From Phallusia mammillata (lineage: Eukaryota), in assembly GCA_965637545.1 (NCBI GenBank), contig OZ281500.1:2108001-2172000 (forward strand): a stretch of 64,000 nucleotides of DNA, given 5' to 3'. Below, piece after piece: positions 4,526-54,829 of this stretch (position 1 is its first letter; every line of letters starts with the position of its first letter). The position numbers were made by a program, and so were the translations under genes. Under the pieces are notes generated by a model, which did no database searches, had not been told where the DNA came from, and worked only from the letters and a program-made list of their open reading frames with translations.

Positions 4526-4725
4526 NNNNNNNNNNNNNNNNNNNNNNNNNNNNNNNNNNNNNNNNNNNNNNNNNNNNNNNNNNNNNNNNNNNNNNNNNNN
4601 NNNNNNNNNNNNNNNNNNNNNNNNNNNNNNNNNNNNNNNNNNNNNNNNNNNNNNNNNNNNNNNNNNNNNNNNNNNNNNNNNNNNNNNNNNNNNNNNNNNN
4701 NNNNNNNNNNNNNNNNNNNNNNNNN
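4526..4725. other. Assembly gap (200 N)
   Basis: Run of 200 N; flanks 3687-4525 and 4726-5574 are near-identical. Confidence 0.99.
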
Positions 4726-29504: not shown

Positions 29505-30962
29505 CTAAACAAGATCAGCCTCATCGGAATGTTGGGACACTGATTCCCTTTGTGTCTCCTCCGATGAGGATCCATCGTCTCCTCCTCCATCCGAATCACA
29601 TCCATCCGACTCCGAGAAGGATATCTTCCCCATCTTGTAGAGAGGAACGTACTGGGTCCTGGCTACTTTTCGGGGTCGGTTAAGAGACTGAGTCCCTGAT
29701 GGAACAAGAAAGCGGGTACGAACTCCTGAGGACTTTCTCCTGCGAGGTTCGATCTTCTCATGCGCCTCCTGCCATCTCTTCTTGGCGGGTGCAGCATCTT
29801 TTGTTTCTGGAGCACGTTCCTGTTGCATCTTAGGTGGCTCTTCTACCGGTTTTGGTGCAGGAGGTTGCGGTGCCTGCTTGGGACTTGTATCAACCGGCAA
29901 ACTGGATACAATAGTTGGGGATGAAACAGCCGGTTTCAGTTGTGTTGATTCAACAGCTGCTTGTGGGCCATAATAACCCGATGTTGGTGGATAATACTCG
30001 GTAGTTGGGACCGGTTTCTTGTAATCTGGATTCTCTTCATCTTTCTTTCTCTTCTTCTTGCCGAACCCGATCGCGCCTTTAGCGATAAGATGAATCATCT
30101 CGATAATGCACAGAATCAAACACAGCACACCAAGGGTGTTCATGTACCTGAGGAAAATCGTCTTTTCCCACGGCCTGGAAACCCAACAAGGAACATAGGC
30201 ATTATCGTTGCCAGGCAACATATGCTGACCGCAAGCCCAGCGCACACTGTCGCCTCCACAACGATAAAGTTGAGGAACTCGAATCCAGAAGAGATCGAAG
30301 ATAGAACCGACTCGCCTCCCGTCGGACACGATTCGGCCGTCGTTAGGCACATTCGGGTACTCAGCGAACCGGAACAGGTCGTAGGCGAGAACTAGGAACA
30401 CTATCTCAACTATGATCCTCACTATCACAGAGCAGAAGTAAGCAAGTCTTATGCCTCGTGTTAATGTTATTTCCTCAAGTTTATCTTTGTTATAAACGTC
30501 CTTGTGTTTCTGTTTTCCAATTCTTCGTTTCTTCCGCTGTAAGCGTTGAGCGAGAGTACTACCTGGGACGTTGCTAAGCACATGATCCCAGCGGTCCTGA
30601 GCCGCAGCAGAAGCTTCTTCTTCTTCTTTCGCTTTTGCTTCTAGTATTTTTAACTTCTCAACTTTGGCGTTGACGTACACTGTGTAGAAATGGAATATCA
30701 CAGCGGGCGTGGCAAGAGCAAGGATCTGAAACGACCAGAACCGTATGTGGGAGATCTTAGCGAACTTGTCGTAGCAAACGTTTTCGCAGCCGATCACTTT
30801 TGTGCTGCATCGAAACGCTGACTGTTCGTCGCTGTAAACTTGTGAGCCGATTGATGCGACGACGATCATACGAAACAGAAAGACACAGAGATACCATAGT
30901 TGCCCACTCAAAGTGCTGTACAGATTAACCTGCTCGGAGATTGTTTTAAACACGTCCCACAT
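29505..30962 (-). CDS. Connexin (gap-junction protein), 485 aa, single coding exon
   Basis: Four TM segments; E1 C-X6-C-X3-C (CSTKVIGCENVC), DEQSAF, SHIRFW, CWVSRPWEKTIF; long Pro/Ser/acidic tail. Confidence 0.95.
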   Translation of the reverse strand: MWDVFKTISEQVNLYSTLSGQLWYLCVFLFRMIVVASIGSQVYSDEQSAFRCSTKVIGCENVCYDKFAKISHIRFWSFQILALATPAVIFHFYTVYVNAKVEKLKILEAKAKEEEEASAAAQDRWDHVLSNVPGSTLAQRLQRKKRRIGKQKHKDVYNKDKLEEITLTRGIRLAYFCSVIVRIIVEIVFLVLAYDLFRFAEYPNVPNDGRIVSDGRRVGSIFDLFWIRVPQLYRCGGDSVRWACGQHMLPGNDNAYVPCWVSRPWEKTIFLRYMNTLGVLCLILCIIEMIHLIAKGAIGFGKKKRKKDEENPDYKKPVPTTEYYPPTSGYYGPQAAVESTQLKPAVSSPTIVSSLPVDTSPKQAPQPPAPKPVEEPPKMQQERAPETKDAAPAKKRWQEAHEKIEPRRRKSSGVRTRFLVPSGTQSLNRPRKVARTQYVPLYKMGKISFSESDGCDSDGGGDDGSSSEETQRESVSQHSDEADLV

Positions 30963-31321
30963 CTTCCCTAATCCCTACGTGATGCAACTTCCTAAAACGC
31001 AAGAGTCGTTTATTATAAAATATAACTTATCATAAATAAAAGTTGTTTCCGCTGCTACTTGTGTTTGCTTGTAAGTCAAAATACCTCACTAAAATCCAAC
31101 ATTTTTCTACGCTCCGGTTTTCTTTTCTTTTAGTTAATAATACTGAGTAAATATGCGCAAAAAAGTTTAATTTTTTATATCAACGTGATTTAATATTTAA
31201 CTTCCACACACGGTTCTGTAGCCATTACAATCATCAGGAACGATTAGGTCGCTATTAAACAATGGCAACAAACAACACAGAGGTCGAATCGCGTCACCTC
31301 TGTTACGCAATACAAAGCCCA

Positions 31322-31333
31322 GGTCACGTGACC
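31322..31333. promoter_or_regulatory. Palindromic E-box GGTCACGTGACC (bHLH-ZIP/CLEAR-type) upstream of connexin 1
   Basis: Perfect 12-bp palindrome ~360 bp 5' of the ATG; function untested. Confidence 0.35.
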
Positions 31334-32031
31334 CTTGTTTGGAATTTAGCCAAGAAGCGAGGAATTCTATTATGGTGAAAACTCGACGCTTCGCCGGGGG
31401 GTTTAATTGTCGCCTGTGACGAAACAATGATATTGAGACGGGATCAGGATTCGTGTTCGAGTAATCGAGAGTTTATCGCCACGAAATCGCGAAATCGATT
31501 GTTTAACATTCTCATTACTTTGTTTGTTTCATAAAGACGAGATGTTACGTATGTTCATCACATTATGCCGCAGATTACACGACAACTTACGTGGATAATT
31601 TTGCAAAAGTGAAACATCTTCTGTTTTGAGCTGAACACAATAATTCTGTGACAAAAATTGGGGTTCACTCAAGGTCGTTTTATGTGGTTTGGGAAAATGT
31701 TGTTTTTTTTCGGCTCGTCCACACCCGGGTGCGAATTTTAAACAGCTTTTTTGGCGTAAAAGTCAAACTCTTTACTTCATTTGCTTAGGTGCTTAAATTT
31801 TAGTAACGCATGTGTTTTTTATGTATCAGTCATTGGATTTCAACTTGAATTTCCTCTTATGACACGAATACTTGACAGAAAAACAGTTAAACGATTACGC
31901 GGTGTCTTGTACACATACACATCAGAACTGAATAACAGCAATTCACTTTATTTTGCCGAAACCTATCATCTCTACTTTTTACTTTAATCAATAAGATATT
32001 GCAATTTGTTCAGTTCACAAGATTGTGCTTT

Positions 32032-33281
32032 TCACCCGTGGTATTTTCTTCGTCCTTTGGTTCTTAATGACGATTTCGTCCTGTTCAATTCCTTTGGTTC
32101 TTGGACCACTGAAGAACACCGCAGTCGCACAAATTGTTGGTTGTGACGTGAAATATAACTTTTCTTTAATTTTCTTTTCCTGCGTCGGGCGACGCAAAAT
32201 TTTATTACGAAGTACGTGGACTCAAAAAACGCCAGGAGCAAGCAGATCTGGTAGAAAAACAACAAAATTATTGATAAAATCACGAAATAAAAAAAACTAT
32301 GTTCTATATTGTTTCAATGTAATCAACCGGTTATGTTAGGGTTTTATACGTAGGAGATTTCAAATTCTGCCGACAGAAAATCAGCAGTTGTAGAAATTGA
32401 CTCTGTATTTTAAGAATTGAAATCTGTCCCGTTATACAACTGAAACAGGCTTTGTCCAATTGTGGGCTCATATTAAAATAACATTACATCGTGTTTTGAT
32501 GGCTTACCATGCTCATAATGCTCATGTATCGCAGAAACACGGTCTTCTCCCACGGCCTCGAGACCCAACATGGAACAAAACTGTTTTCCCCGTTCAACAG
32601 ATGCTGCTCACATGCCAAGTTTACATCGTCTCCTCTGCAAGCGTAAAAACGGGGAACCTCCGCCCAAAGTACATCCCACAAGATAAACTGTCTCGGTAAA
32701 TTAGATTGCTGGGTTTTTACTTTTCCAAACAACTCATATGCGAGGTAAAGAAAAGTCAGTTCGACGAGAAAGCGAAATACCGATGCTACGAAGTAGGCAA
32801 GCTCAATACGTTTTGTCAGCACAATTTCTTTTGGACCATAGTCGGTGTAAATGGTTTTTCTTTTGTAGACTTTTCCACGCCTGGAGCTGGTGGGTTTGCA
32901 GCGTGTCCTGCTGTTTGATCTTGATTTTCTGCCGTTTCCCAATCTCGATTTGAGGCCATTTCTGTCGGGGCCGAACTCTGAGAACTGTCCTTTTTCGTGA
33001 AGCGCGAAAAGATGGAACAAAACCACAGGAAAATTGAGGCCAAGAAGTTGGAAAGCCCAGAAACGTAGGTGGGATATCTTGGAGAATTGGTCAAAACAAA
33101 CTGTCTGACATCCAAGTGCAACCGTGCTGCATTTAAACTGACTTTGTTCGTCGTTGTAAACAGCTCCACCTATCGACATCACCGCAACAAATCGGAATAT
33201 GTAGACGAACACGTACCAAAGTTTACCAGCAATAGTGCTATGTAGGGTTGCTTCCTCAGAAAAGCTTGACAAGCCCCACAT
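32032..33281 (-). CDS. Connexin, ~329 aa, two coding exons
   Basis: Exon 1 33281-32508 (donor GTAAGC), exon 2 32247-32032 (acceptor CAG). Splicing gives RYMSIMSM|ICLLLAFFE, aligning with connexin-1 RYMNTLGVLCLILCIIE. E1 is CSTVALGCQTVC. Confidence 0.92.
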
Positions 33282-35285
33282 GGCAAAGGTTAGTGGTTCA
33301 AATCATGCGATAAAACTCTGTAAAATATAATTTTTCTTTACGGTAACATAGGACACAAGAGTTGTAAGCGGATCCAAAATTCAAACCCGAATCCAGGCCG
33401 AACCAGAATCGTTTAAAAAAGTGGTATAAGCACGCAAATTTGATTGACATGCCTTATAACACTTGAATTACCTAAAGTTTCGATAGTAAGCTTGTATCTA
33501 TAACGTCCTAACACTAAACTGATTTAAAAAAACACCTGTCGAGGTAATAAAGCTCCTGCTTTCTGCTTCGCACTGCCGTGCCTTGGTCCGCAATCTGGTA
33601 ATGTATTTTTAATACCTCATTATATGTCAGGTCGCGAGCCCATGCCATATCTCTTTGCTTGGTAAAACAATAACACATGTTCTTCGATGTTATAGGGTTA
33701 AGTGATATGCGATATCGGTATAGGTAGTAAAGGGCAAACAAAAACAAAGAAACATTTCCTAAACACCTTCCTCATTGCTATTTTTGAGTTAACGGTTATT
33801 TGGTGTTATTTTTACATTTTGTGGCCAAGCGAAATATTTTTGTGCTTTAAGTACGGTCAACATGGCATTTTCTCAACTTAACAAAATTGCACAAGCCTTT
33901 AAGGGTCCAAACTCCTTTAATCTGCTAAACCAGTTTTAGCGCCAACGATGGTCAAGGTATTTAACTATTGTTTGTGCCGGTTTTAAACAAAGAAGTAATT
34001 TACCGGTTCGTCATTTTTTTAATGCACAAGATTAATCTAAAATCAGAATGTTATCGCTCGGATTAAAAACAAATCAACTCGAAAGATTAAACAAATTTAC
34101 CGCCGCAGTTTGCTTTTTGTACTTTTTTTGTTATTGAGTATAAGTATCAGCAAAGACACCAAAAAACATGGGTTATCAAATCAAGTGTCATGTTATTTGA
34201 ATAATTCTTGAACTGTACTAGATATGTTCTGCCGTATCGCAACCGATACAGCCGGTTGTATGTGACGATGGATAAACGCACGACAAAACCCGTCTAAACG
34301 GAAACATCTGAAAGGCGCTTTTTCAGAACGTTTCGCATGACTGATTGGTGTTACTTTGTGGCCTCACACAGGTGAAATGCTTTGTTAATACGAAAAAAAA
34401 ACGAATACGAAAGACAAAGGTTCATGAGTGGCTGGCCAGTAAAATTTTAAGCTAAGCCTTATTTAGACCCGAATTTCGTGGGAATTGCAGCACAAATGAT
34501 GAGTGTAAAATCTCTGGAAGACGTCTCTGGACCTTGTTCGAACATTAGTCATGTCAAGATGTCCGTCATTTGTATGAAACATAGAGAAATAAGATGATTT
34601 TCCCGGAATCCAGCTACAATTTTGTTCACCCGACACATCAAACACTTTGTACATAACATATAGCTCTATGGCAAAGAAAAACTTTCTCTACAAAGTGCCC
34701 TCCGCACCAATGTCGTGTTAAGTTCGCCTACCTCCTGAGCGGGACAGTTGAAAGGAAATCTAATGAGCGCAAACACTGAAACATCCCGCAAAATTGTTAC
34801 GTAACAATAGGGTTTCCTGTCGACACAATAAGCTCGATGACGAGAGAAAACATTTCGAATTTCGTTTATCGAGACAGTTGGCGAACTAATTTGTAACAAG
34901 AACTCCTTGTCGAAAAAGGGACATGTCACTCAATACGTACGAGAAATGAGAAGTTCTGTTGTTGTTTTACCCTGGGCTGGGCTAGTCTGACTTCTCAGAC
35001 GACCAAGCAGATATATTTGAGTCAGATATTGTTGGAGATGGGTTTTAAGGCTAAATAACTTCAGCTTAATCAGCAGCAAAAAAAAGCAAGACCTAATTTT
35101 GAAATTCAAACCCAGAAATCACAGTACATCAGGCCTATTGAAGGCGTAACACCAAATCAGCCAGTCGCCAAGCAGTCCCACATACGACCTACTCAGACGC
35201 TTCAGGGCTAATCCCAGTGTTGAAACTATGTTCATCTTAACCAGAAGTGTTGGTGTTTGTTATTTTGCAGTTTTAAAGTGAAAAG

Positions 35286-37220
35286 ATGAAACTGGTGACA
35301 CTACTGGTTCTGTTATTATCCGTTTTGGTCGTTGGAACTCAAGCACGCCGCGCAAAATCGAGAAATGGGGCAATAAACAACAGATCCCCAAGCGAGTTTC
35401 GGGGTGTAAGTTTGGTTGCAAGGCTTGACGAAGCGGGACAAGTTTTGGAACAACGAGAAACAACCGAAAACACTGTTAACGCCCTTGATCATGTCAATGG
35501 GCCACGTGATGATACTCAACCCAAACGATCACGTCCTAAACAAAAAGGTAGGTAAATGTTTGTTTTTTGATTCAAATCATCGTGTTTGAATTGAAATTTT
35601 ATCAAGTCAGTCACATCAGTAACATAAATACTCTTAAACCACTCAAACACATACCTATTCGTGGGTTTAAAATAAAGCTTTTCCAACCTTACAGATTAGG
35701 TAACAATAGCTCAGAAAATTACTAAATTACCACAAACAAAAGATTTTGGTTCCTATTAAAAATTTAAATTCTGAACTTTTCCGTGACATATTCGCAGGCA
35801 AAAAACACCACCATCGTAAAGAGAAGTTGGCCGAAGCAGAAGATGCAGAACGGCGGGTTCGGGATGGTTCATGGTTCTACTGCGATAACAATCAAGTCCC
35901 GAGGGCAGTGGAAGATGTTATGGACGAGGGAAGAGACAGAGGACTGATGTGCAGCCGAGAATATCCAACACACACCTGCTGTGCTGAGAACGACCTCACC
36001 ATCGAACTGATCAGCTCTAGGGTAGGTTGATTGTTCACATGAATTAGTGTAAGGTTTAACGAATTGATTTTGCTCACTGAAAAAATCGCAACAGAAGTAA
36101 TTGGTGCTTATGGTAAGATAAGGTGTAAATCCATACTGGGATCAGAAGCGTCTATGGCAGTGATTCCCAAACTATGCGCAGCGGCACACTTGAGATGTCA
36201 TTAGGTGTGCCGCAAAAAATATTGAAATTAAAATCAATCAAGTAGAGTAGTAGTACCAGGTGCTTAGACCACTATAGGCCAACATGCTCCACGTCTCTGA
36301 GATGTTCAACTAGGCTATTTAACTATGAGAGTGACCTGTATAGCGGCTTTATGACCTCATAGTTACTGCCTTTGTCAGCTAATTTGCTGTGCCATTTTAA
36401 ACTGTTGTTCATGAGGAAATGTTCAAAGCGCGCCAAATAATTTTTGTTTTTTTCTAAAATGCGCCTTACAAGAAAAAAGTTTGGGAACCACTGGTCTATG
36501 TTTATGCAAACCAGCGATCACGGCACACTCATATAGAAATTGTAGTACACCAGGCCTAATAAAGGCGTTATATCGCATCTTGTCAAGATGTTACGTAAAA
36601 GGGACACATGTTTTTAAGCGTTTTTAAAACCATTCGTCCTATCAAACTTGCAAAGTTAGATTTTGCTCATAAACGTAAATAATAATAAAAATATTTTATA
36701 CAACTGCTTTTGCACAAATTTACATGCGTAATGAAAGTGTCGTTTTATGTATTATACCTCTTAGTAGCCTACACTGATTTTCAAATTGACCGCTTTATTA
36801 GATTGTGGAACAAATCTCTGATCTCCACTGTGCTCGGATGATGATGAAGTTAAGATGCGCTCACTGTTCTCCAAGATCGTGGTGGCTCTTCCACGCCCCG
36901 GATCGAGTACGAGACGCTCATCCCCGAAGCATGCCTATCCTGTGCCCCAAGTTTTGCCGCAAGTTTCACGATGCTTGCAGAAATTCAGTGGCAGGTACGG
37001 ACGCGTTTTGTCACTAGATCGGACAAGATAGTTAAATCAAAATCACACTGGTTTTCTTTACTACAGACAATAAAATTTGCCTGTTGATAAATTCTTCAAC
37101 TTGCTTAAAATATTCTGTAATTTAGGTTTGAACAATGACAACTATTGCGATTATCATACCACAAGAGCAGATGGACCGTGTTTCCCAGATTACGAAATAA
37201 GAAGAGGAACAATCGACTAA
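35286..37220 (+). CDS. Secreted protein, 257 aa: signal peptide + basic linker + HHIP-type N-terminal cysteine-rich (folate-receptor-like) domain only
   Basis: Exons 35286-35547, 35798-36021, 36802-36994, 37126-37220 (774 nt). Twelve Cys in HHIP-N spacing (CSREYPTHTCC, CARMMMKLRCAHCSP, CPKFCRKFHDAC, CDYHTTRADGPCFPDY). AATAAA at 37527-37532. Confidence 0.85.
36158..36493. mobile_element. hAT MITE in intron 2 of the HHIP-like gene
   Basis: CAGTGATTCCCAAACT / AGTTTGGGAACCACTG termini; TSD GTCTATGG/GTCTATGT. Confidence 0.88.
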
Positions 37221-37992
37221 ACGGGATGTTACTGATGTTTATTATTCATAAAGTTCTTATTCGCCTTACTTTGCCTGATGTTACCTTCGCAATTATTGAT
37301 TTACATATTTTTTTAAGATGCCTTTATTTATTGTGTGTACAAAATGTAGCAACCTACAGGCATCTAAATTGCTGAAAAACTGATCAATAGCAAAATATTC
37401 TGCTTTATTTGAAGCAGCAATTCCAAACCCTAAACAATTGGGGGCTGAAAGTGCACTCCAGAACTAAATGAACAAAATGTACATCGTTATGTTGCATTTT
37501 ACTGTACATTATTTATTTGTTTGCAAAATAAACTTCCATTTGTAGCATACAGGTTGTTGTTGTATGATTATCGTTTTCACGATTTTAACAACGAACTAGA
37601 AACTATTGTACAAATTTCAGTGAAAAAACATCCTACATTTAATTTAAACGAAAAAAAAGTAAGGTTATTTTTAGTCATTCAGGATTACTTGATTTGAAAA
37701 CGATAGGCTTGCAGACATACAGTAGGGTCAGGATTTTCCCTGACATGTCAGGGAATTTAGTGTTTAAATCTGCGTCAGGGAGAAATGTTAAAATGTACTA
37801 AAAAGTCAGGAATTATATATAAAAATATATATATTTACTATGAAATTAATGTACCAACGGAGAAAGTTTCTAGTAGTTAGCTACAACCGCTTCTATACCA
37901 TGAAACGTAAAGAGGTAAACTGGCGGCGCGCAGTTTAACAAACAAGGTTACTGTTTACTGAACAATACCTGTTTGTTACTAGTTGTCTAACG

Positions 37993-38460
37993 CAGGGGTC
38001 CGCAAATGGTGGGTCGCGACCCAAATTTGGGTCGCGAGACCTTCCAGTCTGGGTCGCAAAATATCTTAAATTTTATGAATATAAGCATCGCATCTACAGT
38101 ATTAATGAACTTTCAGCTTTTTCAGCCTAATTATTATTATTGCATTGTTACATATGACTACGTAACTGCTACATACAGTCTATGTAACAATGCAATAAGT
38201 TAAGCGTACCTGCCCAAGTAGTCATGCTTTTCTGTTACCATTTTGCAGAATAAATACGTTCGTTTACCTACTGTTTAATGTGCTGAGTTTCGCTTTATTT
38301 TGTGCAAGAAAATAGCAACTGAAAAAGCATAATAGCAGTTAGTATTGATATCTAGTTGCTTAGTGTTTTCCACAAACCTACATGCTAACAAAATGCTTGG
38401 GTCGTGATAATTTAGAGCAATTTTTTTAGGGTCGCGCCAAAAAGTAATTGCGGACCCCTG
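37993..38460. mobile_element. hAT MITE
   Basis: CAGGGGTCCGCAA / TTGCGGACCCCTG termini; perfect TSD GTCTAACG. Confidence 0.92.
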
Positions 38461-39453
38461 GTCTAACGATACGCGTTAAACACACAAATAAAAATCCGCG
38501 TCTCAAGAAAACACAGCATTTGATGCTACGCTCTGGAACGTGGGAAATTTCATTTGCTTTAACTGTGTATCCAATACGTAAGGAACCAACTGACAACAAA
38601 AAGTCAAATGTCGTGGGACATAAAAACGTTTTTACAGCGGCATTTTATTTCAAATTTGAAAAGGTCTTTGTGGCTCCCATTGTTTGTTTGTTTTTTCTGT
38701 GTGAAATTGTTCCGAATGGTATTTGAGTGGTAAAGGTTGGCGACCCCATGGCAAAACCGTTCAGAAAAAATAACGAAAAAGTTTGAGAAAAACTGGGTTA
38801 ACGCAACCGAGATTGTCAGGGATTGTGTACTGTAACGATTATGTACCATAAAATATGGCAACCCTAACATACAGGCCCATCCATAGATTTAAAAAAAAGT
38901 AAATAAACAAAACAAACTTTAATTTTTAAATCTTTTTGAAAATAATTGGCTTACCTATGCTTAGTTTTGCGGACTCTAAATAAAAAACAAATGACGAAAT
39001 TATGGAGAAAAACATTTTGCTTCACGGTTGAGCGATATAGGTAATATCACGTGACTTACAGTGATCAACAACAAAGTCATGGAATACACTGAGTTTGTTG
39101 TGAAAAAAGGGTTTCGTTGGTGGTCTAGGTTTGTCTCTTTGAATGGCTGTAACCTCTGGTTATTTCAGTGTATGTTGCAACTGTTTACAGGAACTCGCAG
39201 GTTTTTATCCATAATCGTTCATTTTTGTTGCTATTCTTAAGATCGCTTGCAGACATTTGCTGCAATACCAAAATGGATTAACTTTGCAAATTGATGTTTT
39301 TGTGTTTGCTTGTAAAACCGGTTAAAACTCTTTACTTTCAGTTCAAACGTGCATTGTAGTGGTTAGCTTGTTACATATCCTAATAATCCTACTTAACAAA
39401 TTACAATACCTCTGCATTTAAGAATTAACTTTTAAGTTGTAAAATAGTGTTTA

Positions 39454-39945
39454 CAATAGATGGAAGTTCAGAAAAACATTTAGTCGTTCACCCTTTGGTA
39501 TTTAAGATATATATATTTCGCTATTACGGCATTGTCAGTATCTACGAACAAGCAGAAGGATTCCTAAAAAATAAATGAAACCAGTATGGGTAAATATCTA
39601 CGGTTCCGAGGAACCACAATGGTGTTTCCTGTTTAGGCGGGTTTCATTTGGCCAGCAGAACCTGTGGGTTCAACTACCGTCTTATGCAACCGGACGTACC
39701 CCGCCAGGCTCGTGTGGTCGGTTGCGATCCTACAGCAGAAAACACCCAGAAAACGGATTTCAATGAACATTCAAATAGCATGACACTTGACTTCATACCC
39801 ACGTTTTTTTTTCGGGAACTGTGATGATAAAGTGACAATGCAAATAAAATCTTGACTTGACTTGATGCTGTAATAGCGAAATATATATATCTTGAAAACA
39901 AAAGGGTGAATGACTAAATGTTTTTTTCTGAACTTACATCTATTG
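39454..39945. mobile_element. Fold-back element with ~80-bp inverted arms, superfamily unknown
   Basis: 39454-~39535 (CAATAGATGGAAGTTCAGAAAAACATTTAGTC...) is the near-exact reverse complement of ~39862-39945; no TSD found. Confidence 0.6.
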
Positions 39946-40181
39946 CTACAAGGCTGTTTAGTCTTTATCCACCAAGCAACGGACTGGGTGATTCCAGCTT
40001 TAAGTTTCAATTATGAGTAAAGTGTTTACAAATGACAGATATAAATGACTTTAGCTCAGACTGGAGTTGTGATTGTTTTACTTTAACAAAGTAGTATTAA
40101 CAGCTCACTTTACTTAGTTTTCCTGCTGTGTTGTTTAAAATGATCTAATTTGTTTTTTGTAGATGTAAGACAAAAACAAAC

Positions 40182-43100
40182 ATGGCACAGCCCAATAGCA
40201 TAGCTCTTCCTGTCAAAAGGACTTATTTTCTTGAATATATGGGCAGTTTGAAAGTCCATCGGCTGTACATTAAGTCAATGTTGCATTGGATTGTTGCCGA
40301 GGTGAAATATCGAAGACACCCAACTTTTTCCTCCATAACAATTGAACAAAGCAAAATCGTGGCAAAAAAGGAGGAAAAGATGTTAATTGACGTGGCGGCA
40401 CCTGACACTGTTCTCTCTAATGGCAATGACGCTGACAATATATCTGGTTTTTCGGATCCTCTTGCACCGCTGGGAAATGGTTTGGACAAGAACTCAAATC
40501 CACCTGACTGTCTCCCACTTGAAAGTTCTCTTGATCAAGTTGTGGAGATTATCTCACCAAATGAACTGGAGAAATACTGTGTTGGAATTTTGAAAAGTCC
40601 AAGTCAGTATGATGGTCCATATACTTGCCATGTGTTTCATGATAAAGACAAGATGCTGGTATGTATATCCATTCATAGTTACTGATTGGAAATAATCACT
40701 GGAGATATATACTTTACGACTTATTTTCTTTGTTTTTTGTGTTTGTGGTCTGTTTGCACTTTTCCATGACAATAAAAATGTATGCGGCATAATTATGTGT
40801 GGCCACAGTGAGCACAGTGAATGTTGCTTACGATGGTACTTAGTGTAACCAGGGAGCTTTTGCATGTGCTGAGACATAAAATTTAGAGCGGACATCTTAT
40901 CTCATTCCTTGTTTTCTTACAGATCAAAGAGGTGTCAGATACGATGAGCAAATGTCTCACTTGGCACAGAAAAACTTCACCTCAAGTTTGTGGCAATGGG
41001 TCAGACCAGGAATTTGACTGTGTCAAGTATGTGCTCTTCATCACTTATTTACTAAACTGTTTAGTTATGTATAGAAAACAAACACAATAAAGCAGATTTC
41101 ATACCTGTAATATCATAAGCATTTCGAATGATTTTGGTCCTAAAAATAACGATCAAAGTGAACAAAAAAAAATTAAAAATAAAAGTTGGAATATAATTTT
41201 TAAAAAGTTTGGAAAATTATCTCAAAATAAATCAAAGACAAATGCATTTTTTATGTTTACGCGCTTAACACTGTCATTGCTGCCTCCTTAAATGTAAAAT
41301 TAGTGAAGGACTGTCATGATTTATTTTTAATGTCACATGGCTAACTGAGACAACTAACAAGTATTGATTTCACATCAGGTTTGAGGTGATGATGTTGGGC
41401 AAAATTCAAGTCAAGCAAGAATATCCTCCGCCATCGTTCATTGATGAAGCCGTGGACAAATATCACTCCCTTGAACAGGAACACATCATGGAAAAGAAAG
41501 GGGTAACTTTATTGCTTGACTAATTGAAAAATATGCACTGTGGAAATTTTGGTTTATTACCCAAAGTAAAAACAAATAGTAAATGTTTGAAGCATTTGAC
41601 GACATTCTAACACAGAGCTGTGCATGTACCCTCGTGTGGTGCTAGATCTGTTTCTAGGAGTTCGAAACCTGTTTCTAGGGGTGCAAGACCTGTTTTTAAG
41701 GTTGTGAGGGTATTGATTTTTGGGACTTGAGAACAATAGTATTTTTCTTGAAAATACAAAAGATATTTATGAAGTATTAAAAAGCTAAGAACCACGGTTC
41801 TTTTATTCCAAGGCAAATAAATCACGTATAGCTGGACTAGGCCCATTGTATTCTAGCATATATTCCTCAAAATGTAATCTGACTCCTGTTGCACCACATT
41901 GTGCGTAACAAGGGGAAGTACGAACACTGTTGCTTTGTAACTTCCAAGTTCCTGTTATTTTGAAACTGAAGATCACTCATCATACACTTTTCAAGTTTTC
42001 CTGCCTTGCAATTTTTTATGTATAAAAGAAAAGCAAAAAAATTCTAATTCGATCATCTTTAAATTTGATTGTATCAGATGTCATTTGATTAGAATGGCAG
42101 CATAGGTTTGTCTCAGCTTAACCATTGGGAGGTCTTTGTGGTTTGGCCTGTCAGGATTTAAACATACCCTGTGGGCTTAGGTTATCAAGTGAACAGAGAG
42201 TGCTTTAATAATTGGGCTCCGTTAGTGCGTATTTGACAGTGTTCAAAATCAATGCCCTTCACTGTTTGCCACAAACTATTACAAGGAATCAAAAGAAACA
42301 AACCAGATTTTTTTATTGTTTTATGAATGTAAACTTTTTCCCATGTACACAAGTTAAGTGACAAAAAATGTTTTAGTCTTTGGATCTTCCCGATTCACCT
42401 TTTCAAAGTGTTTCTTTTCAAAATGGACATGAACCTGTGGGTATTGCTTCTTCCTTGATGGACGGATCACTAAACGGAGCATCTGAATTAATCAGAAGAA
42501 ACAGTTCGTAAGCAAAAACTGCCTGGTACCAAATATATTAGTCATAAACAACCCTAAATATGTCATTTGTAGGTTTGTATGTCTGTAATATGCATGTAGC
42601 ATTATAAGCTTCTTTTTCAAATGGAGTACAAGTTTGTAGCTTTTATCTAAATGTTTTTTTTATATTTTTTCTTGGTTTAATGAGTAAATAGCTGCCCAAA
42701 AAGATGTAAAAAGCAACATGCTTTATTATTCAAATGTTATCTTGTTTTTTTTTATGTAAAAATTATATTTTTTACTGTAGTTGTTACATGTTAAATGGTA
42801 TGTTTAATTTATGAAGTGAGTTATGTAACTAAAATCATGGAAAAAACTCCTAAAAAAGTTTTCTGTTTTTTCCAACGATCATTTTCAAGTGCATTCTTTT
42901 GGTTTTAGGTCATTTTTGCCATCCGAGCTTCCGCCAGTCGATCGCCAACGCTGCAGTTCCATCGACACGCCGTCTTCAGCAGCCATGAGACAGAGACTAA
43001 AAGGTCGACAGCGGCACTGTAGTGAGCCCAGTGCTACGTCACGTCTCGGATTTGATAAAAACAAAATCAGATTACTACAGGTATGTGGATGAACAAGACA

Positions 43101-52100: not shown

Positions 52101-54829
52101 ATTAATTGTTTTATTTCACAGGTCGTACATTTCCCACTCACCCCTATTTCAACCAACAGCTCCGTAGTGGCCAATTAGATTTGTTTAATCTACTTAAAGC
52201 CTATTCATTGGTTGATCCTGACGTTGGATATTGTCAAGGGCTCAGTTTTGTGGCAGGGATCATTCTTATGCATGTAAGTAGCGCTAGTGATCGGAAAAGG
52301 ATGTTATAACTTGATTAATCACTGCCCAGCTTATAAAGATGTGTACTGTGAGAAAATCATTCAACACTTGCCCTTTTCACAAAATATTTCAGTTTAAAAC
52401 AGCTATTGGGACTGTTTGTGTGGTATTTGTGGTAGAGCATACAGTATTCATATTCAAACATTTAACTTTCACACCAAATGCTCTGCTTGGTCCCATCTCA
52501 AACGTCACAAGTGCAGTTTTGTTTTATTCGAAAAGTTATTACTGCATGTAAATGCCTAATATATTTTTCTTCCAGATGAGCTCAACGGAAAATGCTTTCA
52601 AGATGTTGTGTCACCTGATGACGGCTGTCGGGTGTCGCTCCCTGTTTCTTCCTGACATGGCTGCCCTCCGTGTTTCCGTCTACCAACTTTCCCGACTTCT
52701 ACATGACTTCCACAGGTAGATTCACCTTTGCACTGATTCGATCCTAACATCAGCTATTAATAAAACATCTGCTTTCAAATGTGTTCACCATATTTGGACT
52801 ATCTCTGGCTGTTATGTGTTTGAAACAAGCAATTTTTATTTTTATTGATTGACAAATACAAAGCATATTCACACTTTTCCACCCAAAAAATCTATAAGTT
52901 AATTATGTTTTATTTGTAAATTTAATATGTACATGGCATATTGATCTTTTTAACACCAAATAAAAATATCTGTAAACCCAAATTAAGGTTCCAGTGTTAT
53001 GTTGTAAGTATTATGTATATTTTTTGTAGGGATCTTTATGATCATTTTGAAGCGAATGATGTCTCACTGATGCTGTTTTCCACCCCATGGTTTCTTACCA
53101 TGTTTGCTTCCGTCCTTTCATTTGGTTTCACTGCCAGAATTTTTGGTAAGTTTTAAGGGTGCCATGTCTTGCAGCGATATACTGCAAAGGGTCCATGTTG
53201 ACCAAATCTACTGTTTATTAGTGATTTCTTAAAAGTCAAAGTTATTGTATATATATGGGCAATGAAAAAAAAATTTTCCAAACGAAACAGGATAAACAAA
53301 GACTCATTACTGGCAATTCTTTAAATTTAAACTAACCATTTGCAGTTTTAAATCAACTCCTTCTGTAGTTTTCCATCTTTGAAACAACCAGTTCTTCTTT
53401 AGCATGATGTAGTTGTTTGTATTTTTTGGTGTAGATCTACTTTTTTTGGAAGGAAAATCTGCCTTGTTTAAAGCAGCATTGTGTCTTCTTAATCACCACA
53501 AACACAAGATTTTAAAGGAAGACACCTTTGAAGGAATTGTCTGTTACTTGAAAAACCAACTGCCCAACATGGAAACTAGTGAAGTCCAAGAAATCTTAAA
53601 GGAGGTTTGCACAGTTATGCTGTAAAATATTCTGCTACGGTAAAAAATATCCAGGTAGTATTGTATGCTAATAGCAAGTAAGGTCCACCTGCTGCACTTT
53701 GAATAGGTAAAAACCAGTGGTGGGATTCAGCCAGTTTCGCACCGGTTCTATAGAACCGTCTCACCAAATTTTATGTGATCAGCGAACCGGTTAGCATTAA
53801 TGGTTACTGTCAATGGAAATATGACTTTTTGTAACAGAACCGGTTGAAAAATATGACTTTTGTGATAGAACCGGCTGACAAAAAAAGTTAATCCCACCAC
53901 TGTCTTAAACGTAGCTGTTTGTGTTTGTAAGCGTTATAAATTTACATTGTAACTGTAGTTCACTATGTACAGTTTTTTGACCTTGATATTGGTGAAAAAC
54001 TGCAAATATATGAAGTGGAATATGCTGTTCTTGAGGATGGCGAAATATTTGGTACATTGGATACTGGTAATTCCCCTGTCAGCGTTACCAAGGAGATGGA
54101 ACACAAAATCACTAGACTGGAACATGTCAATCAAACTGTCACAAAGTATAATTTGGAACTAGCTGAGCAATTGGAGGTAAACTACAAAAAACAACACTTG
54201 TATTTTAGCCTTGTTTACTAGTCTACCTGACAATGAAACACAAGCTATGATTTTTTAAATTAATGATAGCATAGTGATTAATTAATCATTTTAAAGATGA
54301 TTTGCAACATTATTGTATTGTGTACCACTGAATTTATTAACACACAAGAACAAATGGTTGTCAAGCATACATGTATTTTGCCATTTAGCTCAAACGATAA
54401 ATTTATGATTGCAATCTGCAAAAACGAATAATTTTGTGGCACCCTTGTCACCAGTGGTAAAAGTATGCCCCTTGTTATGTAAGTTTGCAGTACACATTAT
54501 ATCTCGAAGAATTACACACATAATAAACCTTGGTTAAATTGTACCCATTTGAACTCAAAAAATTATTCAGATTAGCCAAAAAACAAGATTAATCAATGTT
54601 GATTTTTTAGTTCAAGCCAATACATAGCATCTCATGTTTTGTCAGAATTGGATGAAGATCTGATTTAACTGGGGTTTACTCTTTTTTATAAACACAGGCT
54701 GCAAAGATGCAGATTAAAAGTCTCCAACAAGGCCTGACTGATATGGTGGCAATTGATGAGAAGAAAAGTATGGAACTTGAGACAATCAGGCACGAAAACC
54801 AAGTTCTCAAGCGAAGTTGTGAAATGTAG
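40182..54829 (+). CDS. TBC1D1/4: TBC1D1/TBC1D4 (AS160)-family Rab-GAP, ~1370 aa, 24 exons
   Basis: Exons 40182-40658, 40923-41026, 41379-41502, 42377-42507, 42909-43080, 43271-43360, 43752-43865, 44210-44428, 44488-44604, 44718-44819, 44901-44981, 45214-45350, 45707-45865, 47161-47688, 48550-48716, 49194-49334, 49667-49828, 50279-50452, 52122-52273, 52576-52715, 53030-53145, 53435-53604, 53973-54176, 54698-54829 (4113 nt). Two PTB-like regions (LHWIVAEV; FEVMMLGKI...PPSFIDE), TBC domain with IDLGRTF (Arg finger) and YCQG (Gln finger), C-terminal coiled coil. Confidence 0.93.
46169..46857. mobile_element. Non-autonomous hAT element in a TBC1D intron
   Basis: TAGGGCAA...TTGCCCTA termini, subterminal TTTTGAC arrays at both ends, perfect TSD GTCATCAC. 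Confidence 0.92.
50489..51665 (+). mobile_element. Helentron/HINE (DINE-1-like) non-autonomous element
   Basis: T-rich junctions, 5' hairpin GTCCCCTTC/GAAGGGGAC, sub-TIRs CACATATTG (50518) / CAATATGTG (51639), TTTG microsatellite, two ~159-bp internal tandem repeats (50573, 50732), 3' stem ending CTAGTT. Confidence 0.65.
53715..53902. mobile_element. hAT MITE, same family as 18350-18530
   Basis: CAGTGGTGGGATT / AATCCCACCACTG termini and shared internal sequence. Confidence 0.85.

What the first reader, a model, noticed from the sequence alone, without database searches (positions are those of the whole stretch)
35286..37532. Stand-alone HHIP N-terminal cysteine-rich domain: a Hedgehog-interacting-protein relative lacking the Hedgehog-binding propeller
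Seen: signal peptide, Arg/Lys/His-rich linker (RRAKSR; PKRSRPKQKGKKHHHRK), then a 12-Cys domain and a stop followed by AATAAA. No propeller or EGF exons lie in the ~3 kb before TBC1D. The 64 residues of exon 3 align without gaps to human HHIP IFSVTNNTEC...CRGHIP as I recall it (Cys at 10, 19, 22, 48, 52, 59), and DGPCFPDY matches DGGLCFPDF. Known: HHIP binds Hh through its beta-propeller, while the N-terminal CRD is folate-receptor/NPC1-like, binds glycosaminoglycans and has a proposed sterol pocket. Inference: a secreted GAG-tethered sterol/lipid-binding protein that could carry or sequester cholesterol-modified Hh or free sterol, a mode of Hh modulation I do not know to be described.
Basis: partly seen in the sequence, partly recalled or inferred. 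Interest (0 to 1): 0.8.

Follow-up and report, generated by a model that had tools for sequence, protein, structure and literature searches.

The report
Sea-squirt HHIP gene without its propeller
This sea squirt, like three other ascidians, expresses a short secreted protein that is the N-terminal cysteine-rich half of the Hedgehog antagonist HHIP, without the propeller that grips Hedgehog, so HHIP is not vertebrate-only and its N-terminal half can persist alone.

Summary
A four-exon GT-AG gene (35286-37220, + strand) encodes a 257-aa protein: signal peptide, basic linker, then a 12-Cys domain. RNA contigs from four runs in two studies carry all three splice joints and run past the stop. No joint leads to further exons.

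The domain is HHIP-N type, not folate-receptor type:
- The only solved-structure match is human HHIP-N (7PGK, E 3.6e-10 for exon 3; 3e-23 for an ortholog profile).
- All 12 cysteines align with HHIP-N's six disulphides.
- Scores are 51-79 bits to HHIP and 11-28 bits to HHIPL1/2.
- A domain tree joins it to amphioxus and vertebrate HHIP (97/99 support).
- Both introns flanking exon 3 sit at the HHIP positions and phases.

Ciona, Clavelina and Styela have 240-268-aa orthologs ending in the same RGTID-stop, each beside a connexin gene. The genome's only propeller gene is a complete HHIPL1-like gene on another chromosome, so the propeller was lost rather than split off.

NCBI already names these models "hedgehog-interacting protein-like". 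I found no paper on them. Binding of glycosaminoglycans, sterols or Hedgehog's cholesterol is inferred and untested. The verdict is a new architectural variant of a known family, of moderate interest.

The parts
35052..35285 (+). 5' untranslated region as far as RNA contigs reach (unspliced to 35052)
   Evidence: table 8: X2 record 4 starts at 35052, X1 record 1 at 35061
35286..35547 (+). Exon 1 (coding): start codon, hydrophobic signal peptide (MKLVTLLVLLLSVLVVGTQA), low-complexity linker, start of the basic cluster; ends in phase 1
   Evidence: joint 35547|35798 in 4 runs. Signal peptide judged by eye, no predictor available
35798..36021 (+). Exon 2: rest of the basic cluster (KKHHHRK...RRVRD), then Cys1-Cys4 (the counterpart of the HHIP-N N-terminal sub-domain, with the CC pair)
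   Evidence: joint 36021|36802 in 4 runs
36802..36994 (+). Exon 3: Cys5-Cys10, the best conserved core (CAHCSPRSWWLFHAPD ... ILCPKFCRKFHDAC); homologous exon with the same boundaries and phases in amphioxus and vertebrate HHIP
   Evidence: Pfam Folate_rec 29.8 bits; 7pgk_A E 3.6e-10; intron positions
37126..37220 (+). Exon 4 coding part: Cys11, Cys12 (GPCFPDY), conserved tail RRGTID and TAA stop
   Evidence: joint 36994|37126 in 4 runs; the same tail in Ciona, Clavelina and Styela
37221..37285 (+). 3' untranslated region as far as RNA contigs reach; holds CATAAA at 37247-37252 (possible proximal poly(A) signal, inferred)
   Evidence: table 8: contigs end at 37262, 37280, 37285; sequence
37528..37533 (+).
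   Evidence: depth 0 in bins 37461-37657
29505..33281 (-). Two connexin genes on the opposite strand, head-to-head with the CRD gene: conserved neighbours that mark orthology across ascidians (context, not part of the gene)
   Evidence: Pfam Connexin 1.8e-59 and 7.7e-47; the same arrangement in Ciona, Clavelina, Styela

Best explanation
This is the ascidian ortholog of Hedgehog-interacting protein (HHIP). It has lost the beta-propeller, the EGF repeats and the C-terminal anchor, and it ends at a conserved stop 12 codons after the last cysteine of the N-terminal domain.

Shown:
- The gene is transcribed and spliced as predicted.
- It encodes signal peptide, basic linker and a 12-Cys HHIP-N-type domain.
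- It is conserved with this architecture in three ascidian orders.
- It belongs to the HHIP clade, not to HHIPL or folate receptors.

Inferred mechanism: the protein is secreted and held on heparan-sulphate proteoglycans by the Lys/Arg-rich stretch before Cys1. Its pocket-type cysteine-rich domain binds a sterol, most plausibly the cholesterol adduct of the animal's two Hedgehog ligands. It would then act as a low-affinity, lipid-directed modulator (shield or carrier) of Hedgehog without clamping Hedgehog's zinc site. I put identity and architecture at about 0.9 and the Hedgehog/sterol mechanism at about 0.3. The figure given is for the whole statement.
For: Gene and transcript: model; three joints in 4 runs of 2 studies; contigs run through the stop.

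HHIP-N identity:
- Only PDB sequence match is 7pgk/7pgl, E 3.6e-10 for exon 3.
- A profile of the three ascidian orthologs gives E 3e-23 over chain residues 4-149, with no folate receptor, Juno or riboflavin-binding protein at E<=10.
- The 12 Cys align one-to-one. Spacing is 23,9,1,23,9,3,26,4,7,13,11, against 30,9,1,25,9,3,26,4,7,16,11 in a mammalian HHIP (shrew, P0077) and 29,9,1,23,9,3,27,4,7,17,11 in amphioxus. Human HHIP-N has six disulphides from 12 Cys (PMC8660895).
- phmmer of the spliced protein gives 79 bits to amphioxus HHIP-like, 51-74 to vertebrate HHIP and 11-28 to HHIPL1/2.
- In the tree, the HHIP clade including the ascidian proteins separates from HHIPL at 97/99.
- Intron positions and phases around exon 3 are identical in four ascidians, amphioxus and a non-human vertebrate contig.
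- The AlphaFold model of the Ciona ortholog (pLDDT 71) matches 7pgk/7pgl best by Foldseek (E 6.5e-6 and 7.8e-5, TM by target 0.62-0.70). Juno, SMO and FOLR1 have E>1.

Conservation: orthologs of 240, 246 and 268 aa all end in RGTID-stop (RRGTID in three, KRGTID in Styela). They are 56-58% identical over the domain and lie next to connexin genes.

Loss, not fission: the only propeller locus in the genome (C2) is HHIPL1-like, with its own CRD and an SRCR domain.

Mechanism by homology: human HHIP-N binds GAG and PEG-cholesterol (KD 23 uM) and adds to Hedgehog inhibition (PMC8660895). There are 14-17 Lys/Arg in the 45 residues before Cys1 in all four ascidians. The genome has two Hedgehog genes, each with a Hint module.
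Against: No binding or signalling data exist for any of these proteins. The GAG-contacting residues of human HHIP (Arg47, Arg51, Arg54, within the Cys1-Cys2 loop) have no basic counterparts here. The loop is shorter, with net charge -3 here and in Styela, -1 in Ciona and +2 in Clavelina. GAG binding would therefore have to use a different segment. Amphioxus HHIP-like has no basic cluster at all.

HHIP-N's affinity for cholesterol is weak, and HHIP-N has not been shown to inhibit on its own (PMC8660895). The structure model is of the Ciona ortholog, not of this protein, and is only moderately confident, with low pLDDT in the putative pocket loops. Tissue and stage of expression are unknown because run labels are coded.
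Confidence: 0.5

Rival explanations
1. Same protein and same descent from HHIP, but its present function has nothing to do with Hedgehog. Once freed from the propeller, the pocket-type cysteine-rich domain binds another small lipophilic ligand, a free sterol or a protein partner in the extracellular matrix.
For: Pocket-type CRDs of this superfamily bind very different ligands: folate, riboflavin, cholesterol (PMC8660895). The high-affinity Hedgehog site of HHIP is in the lost propeller. The GAG-binding loop is remodelled. Strong conservation of CSPRSWWLFHAPD among ascidians differs in several positions from vertebrate CSPHSQSLFHSPE.
Against: The closest characterised domain binds PEG-cholesterol and contributes to Hedgehog inhibition. 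The animal keeps two cholesterol-processing Hedgehog genes. No alternative ligand is suggested by any search.
Confidence: 0.35
2. The short form is only one isoform. A longer transcript skips the stop and joins propeller and EGF exons further away.
For: Contigs cannot show all isoforms, and rare variants are dropped (caveats).
Against: All four runs' contigs read straight through the stop into the 3' UTR. No GSDH or HHIP-propeller match exists on this chromosome, and the only one in the genome belongs to a complete HHIPL1-like gene. NCBI models in three other ascidians stop at the same RGTID, and their downstream neighbours all differ.
Confidence: 0.03
3. It is a folate-receptor/retbindin-type vitamin-binding protein that only superficially resembles HHIP.
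For: Pfam files it under Folate_rec (29.8 bits for exon 3, 25.7-32.4 for orthologs). The genome has many Folate_rec genes.
Against: There is no folate receptor, Juno or riboflavin-binding protein among PDB sequence hits at E<=10, while HHIP-N scores 3e-23. Foldseek gives Juno/FOLR1 E>1. tblastn of the protein against two of the genome's Folate_rec loci finds nothing significant. All 31 hits of the exhaustive search that carry names are HHIP.
Confidence: 0.03
4. It is a decaying remnant of HHIP, transcribed but without function.
For: It is a truncated gene, and tunicates are known for gene loss (general knowledge).
Against: The reading frame is intact, with all 12 Cys and the C-terminal tail invariant. 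Identity is 56-58% over the domain across ascidian orders that separated hundreds of millions of years ago. Exon structure and neighbourhood are conserved.
Confidence: 0.03

Closest known systems
Vertebrate HHIP (Hedgehog-interacting protein), N-terminal domain HHIP-N (PDB 7PGK/7PGL; PMC8660895)
   Same: It has a signal peptide followed by a 12-Cys bipartite domain with the same cysteine order and near-identical spacing. Identity is 29-32% over the domain. The same two intron positions flank the core exon. A basic region lies near Cys1. The predicted fold matches HHIP-N best.
   Different: It has no beta-propeller (the zinc-site Hedgehog binder), no EGF repeats and no C-terminal helix. The Cys1-Cys2 loop that carries the GAG-contacting arginines is shorter and mostly not basic (net -3 to +2 across the four ascidians), and the basic cluster lies upstream of Cys1. 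The stop comes 12 codons after Cys12.
Amphioxus 'hedgehog-interacting protein-like' (XP_019621383, 792 aa; P0004)
   Same: It is the closest non-tunicate relative of the domain (79 bits; 34% over the domain, 41% in exon 3). The intron positions are the same. It is sister to, or mixed with, the ascidian proteins in the tree (96/96).
   Different: It is full length: CRD, long acidic/basic linker, GSDH propeller with an HHIP-type acidic loop (FDGLSDF), EGF repeats and a Kunitz domain. It has no basic cluster before Cys1.
HHIPL1/HHIPL2 (HHIP-like proteins; includes this genome's gene at C2:25.196-25.204 Mb)
   Same: They belong to the same superfamily, with an N-terminal 12-Cys Folate_rec-type domain.
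   Different: The scores are much weaker (11-28 bits). They form a separate clade (97/99). Their CRD is encoded almost entirely by one exon. It is always joined to a propeller, and to SRCR in HHIPL1.
Folate receptors, Juno, retbindin, riboflavin-binding protein
   Same: They share the Pfam family (Folate_rec) and the pocket-type CRD fold class. Like this protein, they are stand-alone CRD proteins.
   Different: There is no detectable pairwise sequence similarity (no PDB hit at E<=10), and the N-terminal sub-domain disulphides differ. They are anchored by GPI or secreted as vitamin carriers.
Secreted Frizzled-related proteins (analogy only, from general knowledge)
   Same: They are secreted, heparin-binding proteins built around a CRD taken from a receptor or antagonist of a lipid-modified morphogen. 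The CRD can bind the morphogen's lipid.
   Different: They have a different CRD class (groove-type), act on a different morphogen (Wnt) and share no homology beyond the broad CRD superfamily.

Membership tests
HHIP (HHIP-N domain) | Twelve cysteines in the HHIP-N order (C, C, CC, C, CxxC, C, CxxxC, C, C, C) able to form the six disulphides of 7PGK | tested here: met
   Alignment and spacing; disulphide map from PMC8660895. The pairing itself was not verified experimentally.
HHIP (HHIP-N domain) | Sequence closer to HHIP than to HHIPL1/2 or folate receptors | tested here: met
   51-79 bits against 11-28 bits; tree 97/99; PDB search returns only HHIP-N
HHIP (HHIP-N domain) | Gene structure: core exon bounded by a phase-0 intron before I/L and a phase-1 intron in a Gly codon | tested here: met
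   Same in this gene, Ciona, Clavelina, Styela, amphioxus and a non-human vertebrate genomic contig. The HHIPL CRD at C2 lies mostly in one exon.
HHIP (full-length protein) | Six-bladed GSDH-type beta-propeller with the acidic loop that coordinates Hedgehog's zinc | tested here: not met
   Absent from the transcript, the window and the chromosome. The genome's only propeller is HHIPL-type with GDGGKAGDPWGN in place of the HHIP loop.
HHIP (full-length protein) | Two EGF repeats and a C-terminal membrane-associating helix | tested here: not met
   The protein ends RRGTID-stop 12 residues after Cys12. There are no EGF hits in the window.
HHIP (HHIP-N domain) | Glycosaminoglycan binding through a basic surface | tested here: inconclusive
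   There are 14-17 K/R in the 45 residues before Cys1 in all four ascidians, but the loop homologous to the human GAG site is shortened and mostly not basic. Binding is not testable here.
HHIP (HHIP-N domain) | Binding of cholesterol / the Hedgehog cholesterol adduct | not testable with these tools
   Known only for human HHIP-N (ITC, KD 23 uM; PMC8660895)
Folate receptor family (Pfam PF03024) | Match to the Pfam model at or above the gathering score | tested here: inconclusive
   Exon 3 alone scores 29.8 bits, equal to the cut-off. Orthologs score 32.4, 28.9 and 25.7 bits. The match covers model positions 1-116 of 172 only.
Folate receptor / retbindin / Juno subfamily | Specific similarity to FOLR-type proteins | tested here: not met
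   No FOLR, Juno or RfBP hit at E<=10; Foldseek E>1
HHIPL1/HHIPL2 | HPQCLD-type CRD joined to a propeller | tested here: not met
   Separate clade. The true HHIPL1-like gene of this genome is on C2.

The most novel reading that the evidence does not exclude
The ascidian HHIP-N-only protein is a working extracellular Hedgehog modulator that acts purely through the ligand's cholesterol adduct and proteoglycan tethering. That would show HHIP-N to be an autonomous functional module. Together with the full-length amphioxus gene, it would show that HHIP arose at the base of chordates rather than in vertebrates, and that tunicates kept only the lipid-directed half.
Probability: 0.25. Interest if true: 0.7.

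Novelty: new variant of a known kind. Interest (0 to 1): 0.5.

Why it matters
HHIP is described as a vertebrate-specific Hedgehog antagonist (PMC8660895). The role of its N-terminal domain was proposed only in 2021 and rests on in-vitro work with the human protein.

A natural N-terminal-only HHIP, conserved across ascidians, has two uses. First, together with the full-length amphioxus gene, it moves the origin of HHIP to the chordate stem. Second, it offers a ready-made test of what HHIP-N does without the propeller, in an animal (Ciona) where knock-outs, reporters and in situ hybridisation are routine.

If the protein binds cholesteroylated Hedgehog, it would be a lipid-directed secreted modulator comparable in logic to sFRPs for Wnt. 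If it does not, it is an example of a morphogen antagonist's domain re-used for something else.

Tried and rejected
1. Gene fission. I tested whether the genome's propeller gene on C2 is the missing half of HHIP, and rejected this. That gene has its own HPQCLD-type CRD, a GDGGKAGDP-type propeller and an SRCR domain. It scores 643 and 505 bits with HHIPL1/2 against 212-231 with HHIP.

2. tblastn of the spliced protein against 40 kb around the C2 gene and against two Folate_rec loci (C7:19.98 Mb, C4:18.70 Mb) found nothing significant.

3. Pfam on exons 1, 2 and 4 alone found nothing meaningful. A PDB search with exon 2 alone found nothing.

4. The spliced 257-aa protein has no reference and I did not type it into remote tools. 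Remote searches therefore used exon 3 by reference or the orthologs P0001/P0003/P0065. The structure model is of the Ciona ortholog, not of this protein. Full-length comparisons of this protein were done only in local scripts.

5. The word-index search with the Ciona ortholog returned just three ascidian proteins. This genome's own protein is not in that collection or is withheld.

6. Six literature searches (one located the HHIP-N structure paper; five paired Hhip or hedgehog-interacting protein with Ciona, amphioxus, tunicate, ascidian or urochordate) found no paper on a tunicate or amphioxus HHIP. The library lacks most subscription journals, so absence is not proven.

7. No FOLR, RTBDN or Juno sequences were fetched, so the tree has HHIPL as its only outgroup.

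8. No complex prediction was run, because I do not claim a protein-protein contact.

9. Earlier scan notes hold nothing on HHIP.
Full report
**1. What is in the sequence**

Reading 34800-38200 and splicing by script gives a clean four-exon gene on the + strand:

| Exon | Coordinates |
|---|---|
| 1 | 35286-35547 |
| 2 | 35798-36021 |
| 3 | 36802-36994 |
| 4 | 37126-37220 |

- Every intron is GT..AG.
- The CDS is 774 nt and encodes 257 residues.
- The product has a hydrophobic N-terminal signal sequence and a low-complexity linker that becomes very basic (PKRSRPKQKGKKHHHRK).
- A 12-cysteine domain follows, and the protein ends RRGTID-stop.
- The window has 38% G+C and one 200-N gap at 4526-4725, far from the gene.

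**2. Is the gene real and is that its whole product**

I laid contigs of four RNA-type runs from two studies on 34900-40800.

- All four runs show exactly the three predicted joints.
- Single contigs cover the whole CDS, for example a 1051-nt contig from 35052 to 37262. All contigs that reach exon 4 read through the stop into contiguous genomic sequence, ending at 37262, 37280 and 37285.
- No joint leaves the gene for downstream exons.
- The runs are only guessed to be RNA, but intron-less contigs can only come from spliced RNA.
- A CATAAA at 37247-37252 lies 10-33 nt before the contig ends. The used poly(A) site is therefore probably proximal. This is an inference, since contigs cannot prove ends.
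- The next gene downstream starts at 40161 with a loose end ...ATTCTATTTGAATA. From general knowledge, this is the ascidian spliced leader, so the animal is a tunicate. TBC-domain exons at window 52121-53147 belong to that downstream region.

**3. What the domain is**

*Family and structure searches.*
- Exon 3 alone reaches the Pfam Folate_rec gathering score (29.8 bits).
- Against all PDB sequences it hits only human HHIP-N (7pgk_A), with E 3.6e-10 and 57 residues without a gap.
- A profile of three orthologs hits HHIP-N at E 3e-23 over residues 4-149 of the chain. No folate receptor, Juno or riboflavin-binding protein appears at E<=10.

*Exhaustive protein search.* A HMMER search of 1.84 billion representative proteins with exon 3 gave 31 hits:
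- The best are two ascidian proteins of 240 and 246 aa, plus a 75-aa fragment.
- Next comes a 792-aa amphioxus protein.
- The rest are vertebrate HHIP. Every named hit is HHIP or "hedgehog-interacting protein-like".

*Scores for the spliced protein* (local phmmer):

| Target | Bits |
|---|---|
| Ascidian orthologs | 218-234 |
| Amphioxus HHIP-like | 79 |
| Vertebrate HHIP | 51-74 |
| HHIPL1/2 | 11-28 |

*Cysteine pattern.* All 12 cysteines align one-to-one with those that form the six disulphides of HHIP-N (C39-78, C69-112, C79-115, C103-152, C141-179, C145-168; PMC8660895). Spacing between successive cysteines:

| Protein | Spacing |
|---|---|
| This protein | 23, 9, 1, 23, 9, 3, 26, 4, 7, 13, 11 |
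| Mammalian HHIP (shrew, P0077) | 30, 9, 1, 25, 9, 3, 26, 4, 7, 16, 11 |
| Amphioxus HHIP-like | 29, 9, 1, 23, 9, 3, 27, 4, 7, 17, 11 |

*Tree.* A maximum-likelihood tree of the domain (18 rows, 149 columns) separates ascidian + amphioxus + vertebrate HHIP from HHIPL with 97/99 support. Ascidians and amphioxus group together at 96/96, although their long branches make the inner order unsafe.

*Predicted fold.* An AlphaFold model of the Ciona ortholog has mean pLDDT 71, and the putative pocket loops are of low confidence. It matches 7pgk and 7pgl best by Foldseek (E 6.5e-6 and 7.8e-5, TM by target 0.62-0.70). Juno, Smoothened CRD and FOLR1 follow only at E>1.

**4. Gene-structure evidence for orthology**

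- The 64-65-codon core exon is bounded by a phase-0 intron just before an Ile/Leu and by a phase-1 intron inside a Gly codon.
- These boundaries are the same in this gene, Ciona, Clavelina, Styela and the amphioxus gene. A non-human vertebrate genomic contig shows them too...cag|ATA CTT TCT... and ...CCA G|gtaaaa.
- The HHIPL-type domain of this genome's C2 gene is instead encoded almost wholly by one exon.
- In amphioxus the exon homologous to exon 4 runs on into the linker. In ascidians it meets a stop 12 codons after Cys12.

**5. Conservation of the short architecture**

| Species | Accession | Length |
|---|---|---|
| Ciona intestinalis | XP_002127824 | 240 aa |
| Clavelina lepadiformis | XP_076813562 | 246 aa |
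| Styela clava | LOC120339533 | 268 aa |

- All three have the same layout: signal peptide, variable linker, 14-17 Lys/Arg in the 45 residues before Cys1, the 12-Cys domain, and the tail ...CFPD..(R/K)RGTID-stop.
- Identity to this protein is 56-58% over the domain and 59-70% in exon 3.
- In all four species the gene lies head-to-head with one or two connexin genes. In Ciona, SLC34-type genes lie beyond them, as in this window (earlier notes s1-382321, s1-382254).
- The downstream neighbours differ in every species, and none is a propeller gene.
- The truncation therefore predates the split of the three ascidian orders and has been kept under purifying selection.

**6. Where the propeller went**

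- A Pfam GSDH scan and a scan with the amphioxus HHIP propeller find one propeller locus in the 240-Mb assembly, at C2:25.197-25.203 Mb.
- That gene has its own HPQCLD-type cysteine-rich domain, a GDGGKAGDPWGN-type propeller and a C-terminal SRCR domain.
- It scores 643 and 505 bits with HHIPL1/HHIPL2 against 212-231 with HHIP. It is a complete HHIPL1-like gene, not the other half of HHIP.
- HHIPL, amphioxus HHIP-like and vertebrate HHIP all join the domain to a propeller. The simplest history is loss of the propeller, EGF repeats and anchor in the ascidian (possibly tunicate) lineage.

**7. How it most likely works**

*Shown:* a transcribed, conserved gene for a small protein with a signal peptide and an HHIP-N-type domain. 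Secretion itself is inferred from the signal peptide and the lack of any anchor.

*Known for the human domain (PMC8660895):*
- HHIP-N binds GAGs through basic residues around residues 47-58.
- It has a pocket-type CRD.
- It binds PEG-cholesterol with KD 23 uM.
- It increases inhibition by HHIP.

*Inferred here:* the protein is tethered to proteoglycans by the pre-Cys1 basic stretch. It binds a sterol, most plausibly the cholesterol on the products of the two Hedgehog genes. Both genes carry Hint modules (compare note s1-399251).

*Weak points:*
- The loop that carries the human GAG contacts is 7-10 residues shorter and mostly not basic here (net -3 to +2 across the four ascidians), and amphioxus lacks a basic cluster.
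- HHIP-N has not been shown to act alone.
- Nothing is known about expression pattern.

I put identity and architecture at about 0.9 and the Hedgehog/sterol mechanism at about 0.3. A non-Hedgehog ligand is the main rival.

**8. Novelty**

- The gene models exist in NCBI under an automatic name.
- Five full-text searches pairing HHIP with tunicate, ascidian, Ciona or amphioxus terms found no paper that discusses them.
- The 2021 structural paper, located by a separate search, calls HHIP vertebrate-specific.
- The finding is a new architectural variant of a known family. It carries an evolutionary corollary (a chordate origin of HHIP) and has practical value as a natural HHIP-N-only experiment.

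**9. Limits**

- The spliced protein could not be sent to remote tools by reference. Remote evidence therefore rests on exon 3 and on orthologs.
- No folate-receptor sequences were included in the tree.
- Run metadata are coded, so tissue and stage are unknown.

Noticed in passing
window 40161 (+): RNA contigs of the downstream gene carry a non-genomic leader ...GGGATTCTATTTGAATA immediately before 40161. This is the ascidian spliced leader, so that gene is SL trans-spliced. Its TBC-domain exons lie at 52121-53147. The CRD gene itself shows no leader; its contigs run unspliced back to 35052.
   Followed up: partly
G000:C2:25196157-25203774 (+) (L013-L016, L020): This is a complete HHIPL1-like gene: an HPQCLD-type cysteine-rich domain (mostly one exon), a GSDH propeller and a C-terminal SRCR domain. 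The Pfam Folate_rec genome scan missed its CRD, which was found only by tblastn with HHIPL1/2.
   Followed up: partly
G000:C4:24069654-24190000: A dense tandem array of Folate_rec-type exons on both strands. It includes three hits with identical scores spaced about 11.8 kb apart (24069654, 24081540, 24093385), which points to recent tandem duplication. Several copies have in-frame stops.
   Followed up: no
window 35548-35797: This species has an extra phase-1 intron inside the basic linker (between PKQK and KKHHH). Clavelina and Styela lack it; there a single exon covers everything up to the first CRD intron.
   Followed up: partly
P0004 (amphioxus), P0072/P0073/P0078 (horn shark HHIP isoforms): Amphioxus HHIP-like and some shark HHIP isoforms end in a Kunitz/BPTI domain, which the mammalian HHIP entries in the same hit list lack. 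The ancestral chordate HHIP may have carried a protease-inhibitor domain.
   Followed up: no
window 36157-36672 (intron 2) and 39631-39857: Short RNA contigs of high depth with loose ends on both sides and 95-99% identity. They are most likely transcribed repeats from other copies in the genome, not exons of this gene.
   Followed up: no
P0007, P0011 (stingray), P0039, P0040 (cetacean, zebu): Vertebrate databases also hold 195-235-aa CRD-only 'HHIP-like' models. One shares a 90% cluster with a 698-aa manta HHIP, so these look like truncated isoform or fragment models rather than separate genes.
   Followed up: no
G000:C4:11971852-11974966 (-) and C4:19007673-19015262 (-): Two Hedgehog genes, each with HH_signal and Hint exons, lie on the same chromosome about 7 Mb apart.
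   Followed up: partly
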